The notes: generated by a model from the sequence alone, not told the origin. A stretch of 64,000 nt of DNA from Selaginella moellendorffii (GCF_000143415.4 NW_003314265.1:2869181-2933180), one strand, 5' to 3'; shown: positions 17,385 through 36,900, counted from the first letter of the stretch. Numbers and translations are program-made.

Positions 17385-17830
17385 GCAATGAAAATTCATC
17401 CTTTCATCCTTATGTGCCAAGAAGAGAGATGCAAAACGTGTATTTTATTAGCACAAGAGTGGTTTAGAGGTGTCATTATGAACGAAATTGCTAAGCTTGA
17501 CCACTTTGTATTTATTCCTTCATTCATTAGCCCCTTACAGGGGTGCATGAGACCCACAAATTGTAGTCAGCCGTTTTGATCTCGTGAGCTTCGTTTGCTG
17601 ACAAATACAGACAAGTTATTTAGCTATGCCATAACAACTATGGTTCAAGCTTTTTCATTTCGCAAATGACACATTTTTGCAAATAATTAGTGAAAGTTTT
17701 TGCAACTTAACATCTTTTCATCCCAATGATATAGTGCTGTTGAAAGATTCTCATGTGGTTGTTCTTCAAGAGTTTTCTTTTATGGATCTAAAATTCTTGT
17801 GCGGGAACTCAAGAGTTTACCCACCTGAGA
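17373..17830 (+). pseudogene. RBOH 3'-part remnant (inverted relative to 23294-26924)
   Basis: Colinear patches encode [20 protein letters not shown] and GSKILVREL; intron sequence also matches (aatgaaaattcatcc vs aatgaaagatcatcc). Confidence 0.85.
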
Positions 17831-19073
17831 ATGTAGTGGCGTGATTGCAATCTCCTTGAACTATAATTTACAAGCTAGAAAAATCAGTAGCAAAAAAGAA
17901 AAAGGAAGGGAATTGTGGTAGCTTCAGCAGCAAAATCGTCTTAAGATTGAAGAGAAAACACCAAAAAGTAGACAACCGAGGAGAAAAGATAGCAAGACAA
18001 AAAATTTATGTAAATTGAAGTATGACAAAGAACACCACAGTGAGCTCAGTCTTGAGGTTGAGAACCTTGGCCTGGAAAGCCACAGTTTGAGCTCTGAGAT
18101 CGTGAACCTCATTTCTGAGAGCCTCAACCTTCTTATCAAACTGAGCTCACGCTCATGAGTTTTGAGGCCTTCAACCTTTGGTTTTGCTACTGCCCTTACA
18201 GCAATGAGCGCGCATTACTTTTGCTTAATGTTCTGTGCAGCCACCTGCTTGCCTTCTACAGCCACCTGTGCCTCGAGCGCATCAAGTTTCGCAAGCACAC
18301 TTTGGTTGAGCAGTTCTTTCACATGTTGTAAAACCTCCTGTTCCTTGCATTCTTCCTGAACACATCCTCTTTTGCTTGCTCTTGCATGAGACAATAGCTC
18401 CTCTTCTGTTTTTCCATGAATAGCTTGGCTACTTCTTTCTTCTCTCAGGGCTTTTCTTTGAGCAAATGGTTTTGATCAAGTGCTCAATTTTGCATGACAT
18501 TTCTAGGAGGCTGTGGCAATGCCTTGTCGAAAGCAAGAGCATATCTTTGCACAATAGCTTCGTTATGCCAGTTTTATCACAAAAGCGCAAACAAAACTAG
18601 AATTACAAAATCACAAGTGGTAATATCTAGAACTCGAGGAAAGTCTTCAATTTTTGGCCACATATCATCTGTCTGAAGCTAATTCAAAATGCTCCATAGA
18701 TATGTATAGCATATTAAATTCATATTAGTATATGAACTGATCATATAACTTTGATTGTGATGTCAATTTCAGTAAAACAAAATAGTAAATAATTTTAGAA
18801 AGCTAAACTTTATGGTTTTTTAAATTTAATGCTATCCATTTAATCAAGAAAATATATCCAGAATAAAGAAAGTAATGTCATTAGAAAAAATAACAAGCCA
18901 AAATGTCTAAAAGAAACTTGTAATTTATATTTATTATTATAAATAAATGAAAACATGTTTTCATTACAATTTAGTTTAAAACTATATTAATTTACACATT
19001 ATTAAATAAAAAATTGGTTTAAACATAATAAATATTTATTATAAATGAAAAGCTATGTTATAAGTGGCATCAA

Positions 19074-23140: not shown

Positions 23141-23270
23141 TACAGTTTAAGGATCTTGCAATCACACCTTTCACCTCCACTACATTTTAGTGTGGGTAAA
23201 TTGCGACTGTAATGTCCTATATGTCGCAGGGGTGGATGTTTAGAGCATGAGAGACAAATGTGGTGTGCCT
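23141..23270 (+). pseudogene. Decayed copy of APC11 last exon and 3' UTR
   Basis: tacagttt..cttgcaatcac..cacctcca..gtgggt..tgtcctat.tgtcgcaggg..tagagcatgagagac matches the reverse complement of 33115-33240. Confidence 0.88.
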
Positions 23271-29049: not shown

Positions 29050-32000
29050 TAAAGGTAAACTCAACTCCATTAGTAGTATCAGATCATAATCATATAGGAA
29101 TTTATATGGTGAAGCACTAATAAAACTTTGCACCCCTATAATATATGCATACTGAAAAAATGGTAAATAACCATCTTAATTTGAATGTTGAAAGTTCACG
29201 TACTTCACAATCATTTCTTTGAAAGTGGAGTGAGACATTCCACCAAACCATCTAACATAGATAATAAGTACTTGTGAAAATGTGATATATCCCCAATTGA
29301 GACATTAAAATATGAAATGCTTTAACTATAAATGCGAGACCATTATCTAAAAGAATTCACTCCGAATAGAAATGTTAGAACACCACTTGATTAAGGAGGA
29401 AATATCCAATACCAATTGCAAACACACTAGCAAAAGCATTGAATTCCACCCAAAAAGTCAAGTAGTCAAAAACAATAATGACATACTCATGGCACCAATT
29501 GCAACTACGTATATATTAGATAATGTCACATCACATCTTTGACCAATAGAAAAATCTATGCAGTTTATTAGTCACATGATAATGTTCCATATGCCTACCT
29601 AGAATAGGAGAATTATGGTAAGTATAGAGAAAGTGTAGAATAAAAATCGAAAGCACCACCAATCGTAAATGATCATCATGATCTATCTCTACAAAATAAA
29701 GAAGATTATCCTCAAGGTAATATTAAGAATGTAAATGCCAAAATAACAAGTCATTAGCAAGTGATGTAAGATTTTTAAACCCATTGGGAAATATTCAAAT
29801 CCACAGCTCAACCTTTTGAGCCTCACGAACCTCGTCAAGAGAAAATAAATTTTGCTCCTTGTAGATATTGAATATCAAAGATAACAACTGTCAATAGCAC
29901 AAAATTGTCATCCAAAAAATCCATAGATACTAGAACAACATGTTCATTAGAAATATAAAAAGAAAGTGAAAAAGGAAAAGGAGCTCGAGAAAGAGTGTTA
30001 GCATTAACTGTAGAACTCCCCGAATGATAACTAACATTAAAATTATATATCTGAAGCTTCAAAGCCCATCGAATAGTACAATTAACAAAGTTCTTCCACT
30101 TCAATAATGAAGTAACCATAATATAATCACCTTCTAGTAATATTTGAAAACCATATAGATATACATGAAGTTTTTCGAAACCCCAAACTACTCCTTTTTT
30201 ATCGTGGATTTATCTCCATTGGTTGTAATGTACGGCTAATGTATGGGATGACACTAATCAGGCACACTCGGTTTCGTTTGCATTAGCACATTTGTAAAAC
30301 TGATATTAGAAGTATTCACGTGTAAAATGAAAAGTCGAATGTAGTTAGGATATGCTAAAACTAGAGGAGTCATGAATAACTTTTTTAGATCTGTAAAAAT
30401 CTACTCATAATTCTCGGACCAAATGAAAAACAACCTTAATAACTTTAACAATGCTCGCAATAGTGCAGTACAATCAAAAAAATGATTAACAAAATAGTTG
30501 AGATATTGCATCTTGCCTAAGAAGCATTGTATATTATTCACACATTTTGGAGTAAAGAACTTGAGAACAACCATAAGTTTATCAGGATCAATTTGCAAAT
30601 TTTCACGAAAAATACGGTATCCAAGATAAGTGGTGTCTTTAGACCTAAACACACTTTAATTACTTTAGCTTTAAACTAACTTTCTGTAATCGATCCAACA
30701 CTTTATGAATATCACAAACATTTTCCTCCCATTTCCCCTCCAACTGGATCAAAACATTCGATGAAATCAATAATCACCTTTGGCATATCACAAAGAAATT
30801 TATCTATTATTTGCATTAGAGCATTGCTTAAATCAAACGGTATCACCAAAACTCCTATAGGAACCTTGATTGAACAAACATCTATAATTTGAATAGGATG
30901 ATCTGTTGCAATCTTGGCCCTAAATAACATGTTAAATTCAAAGAGATTAACATACTCTTTTATGAGTTAGTTAACCACTACAATACAAAGACCGTTGGAG
31001 AGATTTAAAGAGGGAATAAAGGAACAAAATAGAAACATAGAAAGAAATAAAAGGGAGACAAAATGATGGAACTAAAGGTAAAAGCAAAGGGATAAAGAAG
31101 AACAAAAGTGAGAGGAATGGAAAAAAGATAATAAAGTATGAGACAAAGGGGAAAAGCCTTAAAGTTATATTTGGCATGATTGCATTATAATAAATTCATA
31201 TCAAAAATGAGGTCAAAAACTTGATTTAACACCACTTGCAATGAGTGTAACTCAAACTTCAGATTGCCCACATACACAACTAAATGTACCTGATCCCATG
31301 TAGATGCGTGTGTATGGCTATTATTATAAAGAATGAAAATTGGCTTTATAGCATGATGCAAATGTAGATGGCAATATGTGGCAATAAGCTAAGCAATAGA
31401 AAATAAACTCAAGTATGTATCAATTAACATGAAGAGAATAATATGAGATCTTTTGTTATAAAAACAAATTTGGAAAGTAAACACTAGATAAATTGGTGTC
31501 GAGTGAACTTTGTGATGATACTCCTGAAAGAAAGATGGAGGGGTCACTAACTTATTTGCACAAAGACCCTCCACTACTCACAGGACTCTTTATTTCTCAA
31601 AAAAATCTCAATGTCCAAATCTTCAACTGTAGTAGCATCAATAAGACATTGTTGACGCTAAAGTCGCCACCCAAGAAATGGTCACTTATCTAGAAAATGT
31701 TAATAACGCTAATAAATGTGACTAACTTCATCATATGTCTAACAGCAAACATCATGGCCATGACCACATCCTTGTTTTTGTCTTTGAACTTGGGCAGCAA
31801 CAGCATCAACTTCCATGAAAGCAAGACCATCTTTTATAGAAAGTGAAATTAAAGGTGTGGCAAACACTTCTTCATGATCTTATAGGATTTATGTATACAC
31901 TTTCTTTAGCCACTTTGTTGATGCTCTTCCCTTTGGCATAATGTTATAAAACGTTACCTCTTCCACTTTTCATTACATGTACATTCTTAATTTGATTTGC

Positions 32001-32710
32001 TTTGACATATTTGCCTTTGCACGAAACAAAGGGTTTCAGAAGCGAATGCCAAATTGCATCACTAACTTAAATGGCCCATAATGAAAATGATGCAATTGTT
32101 AGAAAATCACAACCATTGGTATGTTCAAATATGCATTTGAAGACATATAAGAGAATGCTTAAACCATTGTACAATTGCAGTGCCATCCCTTAAAAACACA
32201 TGGGAAACTCAAGTAAATGCCAAGTATCATCCCAAAAATGATATGTGGCAATCATTGTAAAGTGATTGAACTAATGATATATATCATCTCCATGATTTCT
32301 ATGGAAGAACTCTAACTGGACATGAAGATTGGCAGCAAAAGTAGAAGGAATTATACCACGTGTCATGAATATTGCCATTAATTGAGTTTAATTGTTCAAT
32401 TGAGCAATTGCATTAATTGTTACTTTAGAATCAAAGGAGGAAAAGTCTACTACTCTACTATGAAGATGAATAAAAAGGAAAAAAAGGAAACAAAAAGAAA
32501 TTAAAAAATCTATAAGGAAAGGGAAATTTAGACAATGTAAAAGCTAAATTTAAATTAAAATCCCAAATCTAAGCACTCTTCAAAAACAATTAAAACTACC
32601 CCTCATCTCCACCAATGCGAGTGTATGAAATATGGAAATAGAATGCAGAAATATACATATCAATTAGCCCAAAAACCATAGTTTATATAAGAGTGAGTGC
32701 CAATGGCTAA
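29050..32710 (-). mobile_element. Second, more decayed and 3'-truncated copy of the same gypsy family; partial 5' LTR from 32616, PBS 32597-32614
   Basis: Colinear with ~9560-13790; internal deletions, no 3' LTR, many C>T/G>A differences. Confidence 0.92.
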
Positions 32711-32999
32711 TAAATTTTTAATCTATTGATTGTAGAATAAAATTATATTTATTAATCTCATTAAAAAGTTCAATTTCACTGTGTATCACGATAATAAAAA
32801 ACATTCTAAAAATAAATAGTTGCAGGTTAAAGAAATTATAAAAAATTATGACTATTGTAAAAAACCTAAACTTCCATTATCCATGACGCCATTGGCATAC
32901 AACCTCAGCCCTCTCTAGATTTCCAGATTTCTCCATTCTTTAGCGCTCACTTACAAGAGAGACTAGTGTTTTGAATCCCAACCCTGAAGGTTTCTCATT

Positions 33000-33085
33000 C
33001 GGTTCATTCTTGGCGCGGGAGTGACTCGGGAATACTCTCCACCAAGTTCAACTCCCACAAGGAGAACTTTTGGCACACATACACG
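33000..33085 (+). pseudogene. RBOH last-exon remnant, tail-to-tail with intact APC11
   Basis: attcttggcgcgggag..gaatactc..ccaccaagttcaactcccacaaggagaacttttggcacacatac matches the RBOH end ccaccaagttcgacttccataaggagaacttttgatacacatac. Confidence 0.85.
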
Positions 33086-33119
33086 CAAACAACACACAGA
33101 CGTCATGTTTATTCGTCTC

Positions 33120-33840
33120 TCATGCTCTATACTTCCACTCCCTGCGACACATAGGACACTGTGGTCGGGGGCTCTGCGAGTTCACCCACTTGAGAATACA
33201 ATGGAGGTGGAACGCGTGATTGCAAGCTCCCCAAACTGTAGATCACAACCGAGAAAACACACAGGTAGTCAGTAGCAAACGATAACAATCAAAGACTACA
33301 AAGGAAACAGGAAAGCCAAACTAACAAACTTGACTCTGTCCAGTGAAGAGATCTCTCGCAGCTGCATGCTTAGAAGCTGCGGAAAAATCGATCGTTTTCA
33401 CTGCGAAGATCGCTCTAGCACTAGAAAACCTTCTCGGGTCTTCCCTCGACGAGAGAGCTCGCTCGAAGAGAGGGCCGAAGTGTGCGTATCTCAAGCCAGA
33501 CGAAACGAAAACAGAGAATACAGACACCAGAGGAAAAAAAAAACCACTTACTGAGAGGGCAATCGTCGCCGGGCATCTTGCAATCCGGGCAGCATCCATC
33601 AAACGCCATTCGGCAAATCCCACAGGCGTCGTCGTGCGCGTCCCATGTCCAAGAAGCCACAGCGTGCCATCTACAAAAACGAGTCTCGTAGAGAAGAAAG
33701 AAAAAAAAAAGAAAAGAGAAACTTACTCTAAGATTTACAATGCCGAGCCGATCGCGAGAGCCAGCAGTTAAGGAGATCACAACAAGGAAGAAAAAAAATG
33801 CAATAGATCGAGCAAGGATACTCAGCACCTTCACCTTCAT
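33120..33840 (-). CDS. APC11: Anaphase-promoting complex subunit 11 (RING-H2); exons 33840-33822, 33727 (1 nt), 33670-33552, 33235-33120
   Basis: Spliced product MKVKVLKWHAVASWTWDAHDDACGICRMAFDGCCPDCKMPGDDCPLIWGACNHAFHLHCILKWVNSQSPRPQCPMCRREWKYRA*. Confidence 0.95.
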
Positions 33841-33904
33841 CGCGCGCACAAGAACCCTAAAACCCTTCCACGAAAGTAACGTTTTAGGGCTAAAGGAGAG
33901 GGGG
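33841..33904. promoter_or_regulatory. 64-bp divergent spacer with an inverted pair of telo-box-like motifs
   Basis: ccctaaaac (33855-33863) and its exact reverse complement gttttaggg (33881-33889) lie between two divergent ATGs. Confidence 0.6.
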
Positions 33905-36900
33905 ATGAGCTATGCCGCGATCAAGCTGGTTCACGGGCCGACCGGTGTCAGCGCTTGCGCCAGCGCGTTCATCACGCACTCGCCAGTGAATCCGGCGTCG
34001 TCGTCAGGATGGAAATCGGGCAATGCGAAGGACTCCCTCCCCAATCTTGTTCTCGTCAAGGCCAATGTGCTGGAAATCTACAATGTGCGCTTCCAGGAGG
34101 GGGACGAGAAGAGCGCGAGAGGGGGCGAGCAGCTGGTTGGATCGGCCTGCGTTGCGTTCCCGGCGTCGGCAAAGAGGGGAGGATTCATGTCAGGGATTAC
34201 AGCAGCTTGGCTCGAGCTTGTTTGCCAATACCGGTGAGAAAAAAAAAAATTGTTCATGGCTGCTATGGCTGAGGCATTGTGATCGTCAGGCTTTTCGGGA
34301 TTGTAGACAGCATGGCTATTCTCCATCGTGGTCGAGACGGCGGTCGTCACCGAGATGCTATCATTCTCGCATTCCCGGCTGCTAAGTTTTCTGTGTTGTT
34401 CTTCGATGATGCAACCCAGCAGCTCAAGACGAGGTAAGTTTCCTATAGCTCAGCTCTTGTAAGGTGTTTGATCTTCGCGTGTGTGTCCAGCTCGATGCAT
34501 TATTTTGAAGGACCGGAATGGATACACTTGAAACGAGGACGCGAAAAATTCCCTGGTGGTCCTCTAGTCCGAGCAGATTCTCAGGGCAGATGCGCTGGAG
34601 TTCTTATTTACAAATGCCAGTTGGTGATGATGAAAGCTGCTCAGGTTTGCTCGTTTGTGTTGCATATTTCGCTGGATGTTTTGATATGATCGTGAAAAAC
34701 CACTGACAGGAGGCATATGGGCTTGTCGAGGAAGACGATCCATCTGGGAACATCGTCAGTGCGCGCATTGAGTCATCGTATGTAGTAAACCTGCAAGAAT
34801 TGGGAATGATGCACGTTAAGGACTTCGTCTTTCTCTACGGTAAGCAACGAGAAACTTGGTGCATGCTGATCTGGAGCTCGTCCATCCGCAGGATATATTG
34901 AACCAGTTGTAGCCATTCTTCATGAAAGAGAGCTAACATGGGCTGGCCGTGTCACATTTCGACGAGATACTTGTTGTGTAACAGCGCTGAGCATAAACAC
35001 CAACACCAAGAAGCATCCCAGGCTATGGTTTCAAACAGTGAGTTTTCGTGATATTGTGCTTTTTCTCCCGAGTAAAACCAATCCTCACACAGGGTCTACC
35101 TTACGACGCATACAGCCTTTTAGCGGTGCCTTCACCAATTGGAGGGGTGCTAGTTCTTTGTGCGAACAGCATTCTTTACTATAGCCAGGTGAATGTATTA
35201 ACTTTTAGGCGATGGGTGCTCATACAGCTTTGGACAGGTCTCTACATGCATCGTTGCAGTTAACGAGCTTGCCACTCCACCTGCTGGAAGGTAAACGTCT
35301 GCTTGAATGTCACGTATGATTCAATGTTGATCTATTCAGCTTGGAGATGCCAAGGTCCAAGTTTTCTATCGAGCTTGATGCTGCTCATGCAACTTGGCTC
35401 TCATACGATGCCGCTCTTTTGTCAACAAAGACAGGAATGCTTGTTCATCTGCACTTGATATTCGATGGCAGGTACTGTCAATGAGCACCAAACCTTGTAA
35501 AATCCTATATTTTTTTGTTTTAGGAATGTGCAGAGGCTTGAGCTCTCAAAATCGAAGGGGTCTGTATTGTCCTCGGTATTGTTTGTTTTTCTTTTCTTTT
35601 CTCTTCAAAACTATGGACTTACTCTTCTTTTCATGTAGAGTTTGTGCACCATTGGGGACAAGTTCTTTTTTGTCGGAAGTCGGCTAGGCGACAGCCTTCT
35701 TGTACAGTTTGGTAGCGCATCAACCTCTAACTCACTTGAACACAGCTATGATGGAGAAGACGTATGTTTGAATTGTAATATCATTTGATTGATACTGATG
35801 TTTCATCTGTAGTACGACGAAATGGACGAGGATATAATGGTGCGACCTTCAAAGCGAATGCGTCTTGATGACGATGCCAGTGAACAATCTTTGTATCAGT
35901 ATAAGTCGGGGGTTTCAGATTCACAAAAGGTGATCTGTCTTTCTGATGTGCTGTATCTGAATGTTTCGCTCTTTCTGCAGAACATGAACTTCTTATTTTC
36001 CGTGCGGGACTCCTTATGCAATATAGGACCTATCAGAGATATCACTTGCAGATCTCAGAATCCATCGGAACAACCTGGTAGCGCACAAGACCTGGTTCGT
36101 TTATTGTTTTTCAAAATTTTGTCTATAATAGTAATTTTTTGTAGATTGCTTGCTGTGGCCATGGAAAAAATGGCTCGCTTAACATAATCAGTCGCTCGAT
36201 ACGACCAGATTTCATCACTCAGGCAAATATGTCACTCCTGTTCTTTGCAGTTGCTTATGCTTTGTTTTTTCAGGTTAAACTTCCCGGATGCGTAGGCGTG
36301 TGGACAGTTTATCACAGATCTGGTCAAATCCCTGCAGAAAAGGATGAATACCACGCTTATCTGATTATTAGCCTAGAATCTCGCACAATGGTCAGTGGTT
36401 TATGTTTGTTACGTTGTACACAATAAGTAGTTCGGTAAAACTTCTACAGGTTCTAGAGACCGGCGAGACGCTTGGAGAAGTTACGGACTCTGTAGAGTAT
36501 TACACTGAGGGCCCATCAATATCGGCTGGAAACCTGTTTGGAAGGTATGGGTTAGCCTCGACGTGTAAGTTCTGATCATTCTTTTGCAGGAGGAGAATTG
36601 CTCAAGTATATCAGAAGGGAGTCCGGATTTTGGATGGAGCCCGTCAAACTCAGGACTTGCAAGTAGGAGAACCAGGAAATGCTATTGAGTCTGCATCGTT
36701 TGCAGATCCGTATGTTCTCTTGCGAATGCAAGATGGGAGTTGTCAGCTTGTTGTGGGAGGTACGTTCAGCTTTACGTGTATCGAAGGTTTGCATGCTTAT
36801 TATTTCTCTGACAGACTCGGAAACTCTCACCGTATCTGTATCAACACCTCCAGAACTCGGACTTTCTCCCGATCCAATCAGCGCTTGTACACTCTACAAC

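What the first reader, a model, noticed from the sequence alone, without database searches (positions are those of the whole stretch)
33671..33840. One-nucleotide exon in APC11 between a U12-type and a U2-type intron
Seen (minus strand): exon 1 ATGAAGGTGAAGGTGCTGA (19 nt) is followed by GTATCCTT, the minor-spliceosome 5' consensus, with a U12 branch-site match TCCTTAAC at 33774-33767. Then comes cttAG|A|GTAAGT (A = 33727) and a 56-nt intron ending tttttgtAG|ATGGCAC. Joining exon 1 straight to exon 3 frameshifts; adding the single A gives ..CTG AAA TGG CAC (LKWH) and a complete APC11. Known: a single-nucleotide exon has been reported in Arabidopsis APC11. Inference: the exon is conserved in this probable non-seed plant, and the minor and major spliceosomes must act one base apart, probably in a fixed order, which could gate production of a cell-cycle E3 subunit. 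Caveat: the branch site is ~40 nt from the 3' splice site, long for U12.
Basis: partly seen in the sequence, partly recalled or inferred. Interest (0 to 1): 0.9.

Follow-up and report, generated by a model that had tools for sequence, protein, structure and literature searches.

The report
One-base exon between two spliceosomes
The spikemoss APC11 cell-cycle gene really has a one-letter exon (already published for plants), and the intron before it carries minor-spliceosome signals kept across land plants, which may explain how so small an exon is never skipped.

Summary
The window is Selaginella moellendorffii (100% identical to GL377569.1). An RNA-derived contig joins exon 1 (ends 33822) to exon 3 (starts 33670) with exactly one extra A. 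A33727, in AG|A|GTAAGT, is the only canonical source in the 151 skipped bases. The one-base exon is therefore real, but it is not new: it was shown in Arabidopsis in 2015, reported as conserved in land plants in 2022, and predicted for this species in that paper's supplement.

The part that looks new is the upstream intron. Its GTATCC donor is invariant in 12 sequences of 10 taxa: liverwort, Sphagnum, lycophyte, Nymphaea, monocot and eudicots. A CTTRAY branch motif lies 38-46 nt before the one-base exon in all ten taxa, and the spacer is AG-free and otherwise unalignable.

In Ceratodon, Ceratopteris and Klebsormidium the donor is U2-type, exon 1 has 20 nt, and the annotated products need no one-base exon.

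My best reading is a U12-type intron abutting a U2-type intron, where spliceosome incompatibility prevents skipping. Splicing order and cell-cycle gating remain untested. No paper in the held library links APC11 to U12.

The parts
33822..33840 (-). APC11 exon 1 (coding part): ATG plus 16 nt, encoding MKVKVL and the first base of codon 7
   Evidence: Sequence. The RNA contig is contiguous through 33822 and then jumps. Aligned with the exon 1 of 13 other sequences.
33814..33821 (-). 5' splice site of intron 1, GTATCCTT, a perfect match to the U12-type GT-AG donor consensus
   Evidence: GTATCC is invariant in all 12 sequences that have the one-base exon (the Arabidopsis-lineage loci).
33728..33821 (-). 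Intron 1 (94 nt), read here as U12-type with atypical branch-to-acceptor spacing
33767..33774 (-). TCCTTAAC, a perfect U12 branch-point consensus; its second A (33768) lies 41 nt before the one-base exon
   Evidence: An orthologous CTTRAY block is invariant in alignment A2. A run X3 contig carries TCCTTGAC here (33769 T>C on +), which still fits the consensus (table 3).
33728..33766 (-). Spacer between branch motif and 3' splice site: no AG before the acceptor, no polypyrimidine tract at the acceptor, sequence not conserved, length conserved
33727..33727 (-). The one-nucleotide exon (A), middle base of codon 7 (AAA, Lys)
   Evidence: The only AG-N-GT site in the 151 skipped nt. One extra A in the RNA contig (table 5c). 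Positionally equivalent to Arabidopsis A333.
33671..33726 (-). Intron 2 (56 nt), U2-type: GTAAGT donor, 59% T, acceptor ttttgtAG
   Evidence: It sits at the same position (1 nt before the Trp codon) as the only intron of Klebsormidium, Ceratodon and Ceratopteris.
33552..33670 (-). Exon 3 (WHAVASW...DDCPL), first half of the RING-H2 domain
33236..33551 (-). Intron 3 (316 nt, GT..AG)
   Evidence: The joint 33235/33552 appears in contigs of all four runs (table 5).
33120..33235 (-). Exon 4 coding part up to the TGA stop; contigs continue as 3' UTR to about 32974
33907..34234 (+). First coding exon of the divergent neighbour, a CPSF_A-family (CPSF160-like) gene whose ATG is 66 nt from the APC11 ATG. 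It is not part of the splicing feature but shares the promoter region.
   Evidence: sequence. (gene call with PF10433, PF23726 and PF03178 on the identical locus L005). (the contig runs from APC11 exon 1 through 34234 and then splices in + orientation).

Best explanation
This is the Selaginella moellendorffii APC11 gene. Its codon 7 is assembled from three exons: 19-nt exon 1, a single A (33727) and exon 3.

Shown:
- The mature RNA carries exactly one extra A between exon 1 and exon 3.
- The only canonical source of that A is AG|A|GTAAGT.

Strongly inferred:
- The upstream 94-nt intron is removed by the minor (U12-dependent) spliceosome. It has a perfect GTATCCTT donor, a perfect TCCTTAAC branch site and no polypyrimidine tract at the acceptor.
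- The downstream 56-nt T-rich intron is removed by the major (U2-dependent) spliceosome.

Inferred mechanism:
- A U12-type donor can only be paired with a U12-type branch site and the first usable AG after it.
- The GTAAGT donor can only be paired with the U2-type branch and acceptor in front of exon 3.
- Exon 1 therefore cannot be joined directly to exon 3, so the one-base exon cannot be skipped even though it is far too short for exon definition.
- The two reactions must be consecutive, because the U12 acceptor AG and the U1-binding site overlap.
- The conserved spacer of about 40 nt between branch site and acceptor, three times the usual U12 optimum, may give the U11/U12 particle on the branch site and U1 on GTAAGT room to sit side by side. 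Intron length would then substitute for exon length.

Which intron goes first, and whether slow U12 splicing limits APC11 output, is not known.
For: - One extra A in the RNA contig, with the joint at 33670/33822. There is a unique AG-N-GT site, and only the version with the A is in frame.
- The same architecture is proven by mutagenesis in Arabidopsis, where a putative branch A was noted 44 nt upstream (Guo & Liu 2015).
- Donor GTATCC is invariant after a 19-nt exon 1 in both Selaginella copies, two Arabidopsis-lineage loci, Vitis, Helianthus, Acorus, Nymphaea, two Marchantia assemblies and Sphagnum. Intron 1 length meanwhile varies from 94 to 1109 nt.
- Misannotated proteins that read through the donor as RIL, SIL or CIL (xGT ATC CTx) add Phlomoides, Zostera, Gossypium and Catharanthus.
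- A branch motif YYCTTRAY has its A 38-46 nt before the one-base exon in all ten taxa. The shuffle probability is 0.010-0.018 per lineage.
- The spacer is AG-free in all ten, apart from an AG 2 nt after the Marchantia branch A. The chance product over 8 lineages is 1.4e-6.
- The acceptor lacks a pyrimidine tract, for example AAAAAAAAAACAG in Arabidopsis.
- Natural experiment: in the three taxa whose donor is U2-type (Klebsormidium GTGAGT, Ceratodon GTGAGC, Ceratopteris GTACGC), exon 1 is 20 nt. The annotated products join it directly to the W-codon exon, which stays in frame only without a one-base exon. An AG|A|GTAAGC still lies unused inside the Ceratodon intron.
- Contigs in three of the four runs keep intron 2 while intron 3 is already removed. 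In two of those runs the contig also covers the 3' part of intron 1. This fits slow removal of the block.
- U12/U2 exon-definition cross-talk and U12-to-U2 conversion through a nearby cryptic U2 donor are established (Turunen 2013).
Against: - The branch-to-acceptor distance (40 nt here, 37-45 nt elsewhere) lies far outside the stated U12 optimum of 11-13 nt. CTTRAY also contains the U2-type YTRAY branch motif, and 40 nt is a normal U2 distance.
- No test of minor-spliceosome dependence and no branch-point mapping was possible.
- Sphagnum also has an ACCTTGAT motif 17 nt before its one-base exon, so the long spacer may not be obligatory.
- Marchantia (GTATCCCA) and Sphagnum (GTATCCAA) deviate from the consensus at donor positions +7 and +8.
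- A one-base exon exists in Fusarium CYP621A. By my own knowledge that lineage lacks the minor spliceosome, so U12 is not needed for one-base exons in general.
- The fully spliced junction was seen in only one of the four runs' contigs. Contigs cannot quantify isoforms or give splicing order.
- For Ceratodon, Ceratopteris and Klebsormidium I rely on the deposited protein models, not on reads.
Confidence: 0.72

Rival explanations
1. Intron 1 is a hybrid or minor-like intron that is in fact removed by the major spliceosome. GTATCC acts as a weak U2-type donor. The conserved CTTRAY at about -40 is an ordinary U2 branch point with an AG-exclusion zone behind it.
For: The distance of 37-45 nt and the AG-free zone are typical of U2-type 3' splice-site selection and atypical of U12. 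CTTRAY contains YTRAY. Olthof et al. 2024 describe hybrid introns, of which only about 5% respond to minor-spliceosome inhibition.
Against: Six intronic bases, GTATCC, are invariant across liverwort, moss, lycophyte and angiosperms, which is not expected for a U2 donor. The donor matches U1 poorly: exon position -1 is A or C, and +4 to +6 read TCC. There is no polypyrimidine tract at the acceptor. The branch motif is extended (YYCTTRAY) beyond what U2 branch sites conserve. Wherever the donor is U2-type, the one-base exon is not needed.
Confidence: 0.15
2. The extra A does not come from A33727. It would instead be an assembly artefact, an untemplated or edited base, or the product of a single non-canonical intron.
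For: Only one contig in one run shows the junction. RNA alone cannot say which A in the intron is used.
Against: No single intron can yield CTGA-A-ATGG, because the base after CTGA and the base before ATGG are both G. A unique AG|A|GTAAGT lies in the interval. The same site is conserved in ten taxa. In Arabidopsis, base changes at the orthologous A reappear in the cDNA. The contig has depth 167 and the A restores the frame of a conserved protein.
Confidence: 0.03
3. One reading: the two spliceosomes act in a fixed order, and the slow U12 step is a regulated gate on production of the APC/C catalytic subunit.
For: Contigs that lack intron 3 still keep intron 2, and in two runs also the 3' part of intron 1. 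For plant microexons in general, the downstream intron tends to go first and the upstream intron is detained (Yu 2022). U12 introns are generally considered slowly spliced (title and abstract of PMC4615840).
Against: No intermediate with only one of the two introns removed was seen. Contig depth cannot be used as a measure. Grasses have intronless APC11, and ferns and some mosses lack the U12 intron, so a gate is dispensable. In Selaginella, retention of the whole block stays in frame without a stop, which does not look like a designed off-state.
Confidence: 0.2

Closest known systems
Single-nucleotide exon A333 of Arabidopsis thaliana APC11 (Guo & Liu 2015, Sci Rep 5:18087); APC11 1-nt microexon cluster 1 of Yu et al. 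2022 (Nat Commun 13:820)
   Same: Orthologous gene, same codon and same AG|A|GT context. There is a 19-nt exon 1, and a branch-like motif about 40-44 nt upstream. Yu et al.'s supplement already scores S. moellendorffii as having it.
   Different: Neither paper mentions U12, the minor spliceosome or GTATCC (for the discussion in Guo & Liu). Here the upstream intron is only 94 nt against 332 nt. The codon is AAA (Lys) rather than CAA (Gln).
U12-type GT-AG introns (Sharp & Burge 1997 classification; reviewed in Turunen et al. 2013, PMC3584512)
   Same: Donor GTATCCTT, branch site TCCTTAAC, no polypyrimidine tract, and deep conservation of the intronic signals.
   Different: The branch-to-acceptor distance is 40 nt instead of the 11-13 nt optimum. 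The acceptor is followed after one base by a U2-type donor.
Spliceosome incompatibility enforcing exon choice in MAPK8/9 (JNK) and TMEM87A/B (reviewed in PMC8329584)
   Same: Adjacent U12-type and U2-type splice sites cannot be paired with each other, which dictates which exons can be joined.
   Different: There it makes two exons mutually exclusive. Here it would make a one-base exon impossible to skip. This is my inference and has not been demonstrated.
Recursive splice sites (ratchet points, AG|GTAAGT) and the Drosophila prospero U2/U12 twintron
   Same: Acceptor and donor are juxtaposed, so the two removals must be consecutive. Deleting the Arabidopsis A still allows both introns to be removed, leaving a zero-length exon. 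Two spliceosome types act on one stretch, as in twintrons.
   Different: One base is kept in the mRNA. The introns lie in tandem rather than nested, and both products are constitutive rather than alternative.
One-nucleotide exon of Fusarium CYP621A (Nelson & Syed 2026, PMC12940212)
   Same: A one-base exon confirmed by RNA-seq and needed to keep the frame.
   Different: An unrelated gene. The organism, by my own knowledge, has only the major spliceosome, so it would have two U2-type flanks.

Membership tests
Plant APC11 single-nucleotide exon (Guo & Liu 2015; Yu et al. 2022 cluster 1) | The host gene is the APC11 orthologue (RING-H2, zf-ANAPC11) | tested here: met
   The 84-aa product was assembled. 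It is 100% identical over 56 aa to S. moellendorffii APC11, with PF12861 and PF12678 precomputed. The window is identical to GL377569.1.
Plant APC11 single-nucleotide exon (Guo & Liu 2015; Yu et al. 2022 cluster 1) | The mature RNA holds one base that is contiguous with neither flanking exon | tested here: met
   In the run X1 contig, the joint 33670/33822 has one letter between (tables 5 and 5c).
Plant APC11 single-nucleotide exon (Guo & Liu 2015; Yu et al. 2022 cluster 1) | A genomic AG|N|GT site between the flanking exons, at the position orthologous to Arabidopsis A333 | tested here: met
   A unique site at 33727, aligned with the AGAGTA block of nine other loci.
Plant APC11 single-nucleotide exon (Guo & Liu 2015; Yu et al. 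2022 cluster 1) | Changing that base changes the cDNA (direct proof of origin) | not testable with these tools
   Done only for Arabidopsis.
U12-type (minor-spliceosome) GT-AG intron | Donor matching RTATCCTT | tested here: met
   GTATCCTT at 33821-33814. GTATCC is invariant in 12 orthologous sequences.
U12-type (minor-spliceosome) GT-AG intron | Branch-point sequence matching TCCTTRAY | tested here: met
   TCCTTAAC at 33774-33767, 0 mismatches. The CTTRAY core is conserved.
U12-type (minor-spliceosome) GT-AG intron | Short branch-to-acceptor distance (optimum 11-13 nt) | tested here: not met
   40 nt here and 37-45 nt in the orthologues, against the stated optimum. For this reason I describe it as U12-type by its signals and atypical in spacing, not as a proven member.
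U12-type (minor-spliceosome) GT-AG intron | No polypyrimidine tract at the acceptor | tested here: met
   The acceptor context is gtaaatcttag here and A-rich in angiosperms. Spacer pyrimidine content is 0.47-0.65.
U12-type (minor-spliceosome) GT-AG intron | Splicing depends on U11, U12, U4atac and U6atac | not testable with these tools
   No experiment or mutant RNA-seq is available here. No paper in the library pairs APC11/AT3G05870 with U12.
U12-type (minor-spliceosome) GT-AG intron | The organism has a minor spliceosome | not tested
   There are only unchecked scan notes of a ZRSR2 gene and other U12 candidates in this genome. No snRNA gene lies in the window.
Recursive splice site (zero-length exon) | Acceptor AG directly abutting a GTAAGT donor that is regenerated after the first step | tested here: not met
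   One base lies between the two sites and is retained in the mRNA. It works like a ratchet point but is not one.
U2/U12 twintron | One intron nested within or overlapping the other, giving alternative products | tested here: not met
   The introns lie in tandem, separated by one exonic base.

The most novel reading that the evidence does not exclude
The only one-base exon validated by mutagenesis is un-skippable because it sits between a minor-spliceosome intron and a major-spliceosome intron whose splice sites cannot be cross-paired. The branch-to-acceptor spacer of about 40 nt, conserved since the origin of land plants and outside the normal U12 range, would be the clearance that lets the U11/U12 particle and U1 snRNP define an exon of one base. 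Lineages that converted the donor to U2-type lost the need for the one-base exon at the same stroke.
Probability: 0.35. Interest if true: 0.8.

Novelty: new variant of a known kind. Interest (0 to 1): 0.62.

Why it matters
How a spliceosome can keep an exon of a single base has been open since 2015. [quoted passage not shown]

The upstream intron appears to be U12-type across land plants and has an unusually long, length-conserved branch-to-acceptor spacer. If that holds, there is a concrete and cheaply testable mechanism: spliceosome incompatibility plus spacing.

It would also add a U12 intron that annotation-based catalogues probably miss. The old Arabidopsis model counted the first 10 intron bases, GTATCCTT among them, as exon. 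Both RefSeq models for this Selaginella gene are wrong at this point.

Finally, it links an essential cell-cycle ubiquitin ligase subunit to minor-spliceosome activity in plants. The one-base exon itself, including its presence in this species, is already known.

Tried and rejected
1. A hairpin in the spacer that would bring the acceptor closer to the branch site. RNAfold of the ten spacers gave z-scores from -1.25 to +0.8 against shuffles and no shared structure. Rejected.
2. A single non-canonical intron giving CTGAGATGG (Arg) or CTGAATGG. The contig shows an A between the exons. Rejected.
3. A second branch motif nearer the acceptor in Selaginella. There is none; the only other near-match (TCCTTGTT) lies further upstream, at 55 nt.
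4. Rfam scan of the window for snRNA genes or other RNAs: nothing found.
5. The Amborella locus: the protein was not on record.
6. A metagenome scan to find APC11 genes outside land plants. The 80 loci kept were mostly intronless or transcript-like. Only a few showed an intron near codon 7, and their organisms are unknown. No conclusion on the age of the U12 intron.
7. Literature search for a prior U12 assignment. The searches were APC11 + U12-type, AT3G05870 + U12, nucleotide exon + U12 + Arabidopsis, and microexon + U12 + minor spliceosome + plant. Nothing relevant turned up. Subscription journals and databases such as MIDB or IAOD are not covered.
8. A formal PWM classifier (intronIC or similar) was not available. 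I used consensus matching and conservation instead.

Full report
**Origin of the window**

Positions 30120-36840 are 100% identical over 6721 nt to Selaginella moellendorffii scaffold GL377569.1 (locus L005). A 56-aa query from exons 3-4 is 100% identical to the S. moellendorffii APC11 entry.

**Observation**

On the minus strand the features lie as follows:
- ATG at 33840.
- Exon 1 at 33840-33822 (19 nt, ending CTGA).
- GTATCCTT at 33821-33814.
- TCCTTAAC at 33774-33767.
- cttAG|A|GTAAGT with the A at 33727.
- A 56-nt, 59% T intron ending tttttgtAG at 33671.
- Exon 3 from 33670.
- A 316-nt GT..AG intron at 33551-33236.
- Exon 4 with the stop ending at 33120.

The 151 nt between exon 1 and exon 3 contain only one AG-N-GT site. 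Joining exon 1 straight to exon 3 frameshifts. Adding the A gives an 84-aa APC11.

**RNA evidence**

- A 718-nt contig of run X1 lies on 33206-33235, 33552-33670 and 33822-34234. It has one letter (T on +, A on the gene strand) between 33670 and 33822 (tables 5, 5c, 8). The message therefore reads GTGCTGA-A-ATGGCAC.
- The runs are labelled only as guessed RNA, but the spliced joints show they contain processed transcripts.
- In three of the four runs, contigs that have lost intron 3 continue unspliced from exon 3 into intron 2. In X3 and X5 they continue across the one-base exon into intron 1. X3 also has contigs across the rest of intron 1 (table 8).
- No contig shows only one of the two flanking introns removed.
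- Contigs cannot give amounts or splicing order.

**What is already known**

- Guo & Liu (2015) proved by mutagenesis that Arabidopsis APC11 has a one-base exon, A333. They noted a putative branch A 44 nt upstream.
- Yu et al. (2022) reported the APC11 one-base exon as conserved in land plants. Most monocots are intronless, and Physcomitrium has two isoforms.
- The supplementary table of Yu et al. gives Selaginella moellendorffii a value of 1 for the zf-ANAPC11 cluster. The one-base exon in this species is therefore not new.
- Neither paper contains U12, minor spliceosome, U11, AT-AC or GTATCC.
- No paper in the held library pairs APC11 or AT3G05870 with U12.

**The U12 question, tested by comparison**

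I fetched APC11 loci from 12 further assemblies and parsed them.

Donor:
- After a 19-nt exon 1 the intron starts GTATCC in 12 sequences of 10 taxa: both Selaginella copies, two Arabidopsis-lineage loci, Vitis, Helianthus, Acorus, Nymphaea, two Marchantia assemblies and Sphagnum (alignment A1).
- Positions +7 and +8 are TT in Selaginella and all the angiosperms except Acorus (TG), CA in Marchantia and AA in Sphagnum.
- Several misannotated database proteins read through the donor as RIL, SIL or CIL, the translation of xGT ATC CTx. These extend the pattern to Phlomoides, Zostera, Gossypium and Catharanthus.

One-base exon and branch motif:
- All ten taxa have AG|A|GTA at the one-base exon.
- All ten have a YYCTTRAY motif whose adenosine lies 38-46 nt before it:

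| Taxon | Distance (nt) |
|---|---|
| Selaginella | 41 |
| Marchantia (both assemblies) | 41 |
| Nymphaea | 41 |
| Acorus | 42 |
| A. arenosa | 43 |
| Arabidopsis locus L002 | 44 |
| Helianthus | 39 |
| Vitis | 38 |
| Sphagnum | 46 |

- Sphagnum also has a second motif at 17 nt.
- Intron 1 length ranges from 94 to 1109 nt.

Spacer:
- The spacer is not alignable and has no AG, apart from one 2 nt after the Marchantia branch A.
- It shows no significant or shared fold.

Statistics:
- Shuffling each intron gives a probability of 0.010-0.018 per lineage for such a motif in that 9-nt range, and 0.09-0.38 for an AG-free spacer.
- The range was chosen after seeing the data, so the products (1.6e-15 and 1.4e-6) are indicative only. 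The conservation is still far beyond chance.
- A variant contig in run X3 changes TCCTTAAC to TCCTTGAC, which still fits the consensus (table 3).

**Natural counter-examples**

- Klebsormidium (ATCAA|GTGAGT), Ceratodon (CTGCA|GTGAGC) and Ceratopteris (CTCAG|GTACGC) have a U2-type donor one base further downstream, a 20-nt exon 1 and a single intron ending one base before the Trp codon.
- Their deposited protein models need no one-base exon.
- Ceratodon still has an AG|A|GTAAGC inside that intron.
- So a U12-type donor and use of the one-base exon co-occur in 10 of 10 taxa, and a U2-type donor and its absence co-occur in 3 of 3.
- Conversion of U12 introns through a nearby cryptic U2 donor is a documented route, whereas gain of U12 introns is almost unknown (Turunen 2013).
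- Whether the alga shows the state before gain or after loss cannot be decided here.
- A few metagenomic eukaryote contigs have a single intron either 2 nt or 1 nt before the Trp codon. One of these, from an unknown organism, has a GTATCCTTG donor.

**Interpretation**

The donor, the branch motif, the missing pyrimidine tract and their conservation for roughly the age of land plants make a U12-type intron the best reading.

One typical feature is not met. The branch-to-acceptor distance is about 40 nt against a stated optimum of 11-13 nt. It turns out to be a conserved property, so it is more likely functional than a sign of a false call. It also keeps open a rival reading: a hybrid intron removed by the major spliceosome, with CTTRAY as an ordinary distant branch point.

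I propose that the pairing rules of the two spliceosomes forbid joining exon 1 to exon 3. This would explain constitutive inclusion of a one-base exon. The spacer may let the U11/U12 particle and U1 bind side by side. Both points are inferences.

Against the U12 step being necessary in general: Fusarium has a one-base exon and, to my knowledge, no minor spliceosome.

The general finding that the downstream intron of plant microexons tends to go first would suggest U2 first and then U12.

**Verdict**

- The one-base exon is real and already known.
- The U12/U2 juxtaposition, with its conserved long spacer, appears unreported in the literature I could search. It is well supported by comparison and needs an experimental test.

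Noticed in passing
window 33841-34282 (+ strand gene from 33907): A CPSF_A-family (CPSF160-like) gene starts on the opposite strand only 66 nt from the APC11 ATG. One unstranded contig runs from APC11 exon 1 through this exon and then splices a 48-nt + strand intron (34235-34282). The two divergent transcripts therefore probably overlap at their 5' ends.
   Followed up: partly
window 33552-33840 (-): Both RefSeq models of this gene are wrong at the N-terminus. XP_002988801.2 (MKVKTRFCRWH...) uses a donor inside exon 1 and an acceptor inside intron 2. XP_002964594.2 (134 aa) is the isoform retaining intron 1, the A and intron 2. That isoform adds 150 nt in frame without a stop, so it would not be an obvious target of nonsense-mediated decay.
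   Followed up: yes
window 23151-23201 (+) and 17803-17864 (-): Short APC11 exon-4-like fragments with substitutions and a stop (tblastn). They fit the other first-stage note of a triplicated PPR-RBOH-APC11 block. Only the copy at 33120-33840 is intact.
   Followed up: partly
window 33769 (+ strand T>C in run X3): A contig of run X3, filed under a different organism label, carries four differences in intron 1. One of them turns TCCTTAAC into TCCTTGAC, the Marchantia form of the motif. The other three lie upstream of the motif.
   Followed up: partly
L007:4130-4155 (Ceratodon purpureus): The single U2-type intron of the Ceratodon APC11 still contains GAG|A|GTAAGC, resembling the one-base exon context of Marchantia and Sphagnum. 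It may be a relic or an alternative site.
   Followed up: no
L045:1311-1400; L065, L047, L040/L044 (metagenome contigs, organisms unknown): APC11 genes of unidentified eukaryotes have a single short intron either 2 nt before the Trp codon (L065 GTAAGT, L047 GTGAGT) or 1 nt before it (L040/L044 GTACCT). In L045 the only in-frame donor is GTATCCTTG. Both positions that land plants use together therefore occur singly elsewhere.
   Followed up: partly
window 33039-33079: In all four runs, long unrelated contigs (up to 2336 nt) match this 41-nt piece of the APC11 3' UTR with 3 differences. It looks like a short repeated or shared element.
   Followed up: no
L008:66805-66905 and 66935-67066 (Ceratopteris richardii): The fern locus has a tandem partial duplicate of the W-codon exon, and the annotated first intron is about 63 kb long. 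The gene model was taken from the deposit and not checked with reads.
   Followed up: no
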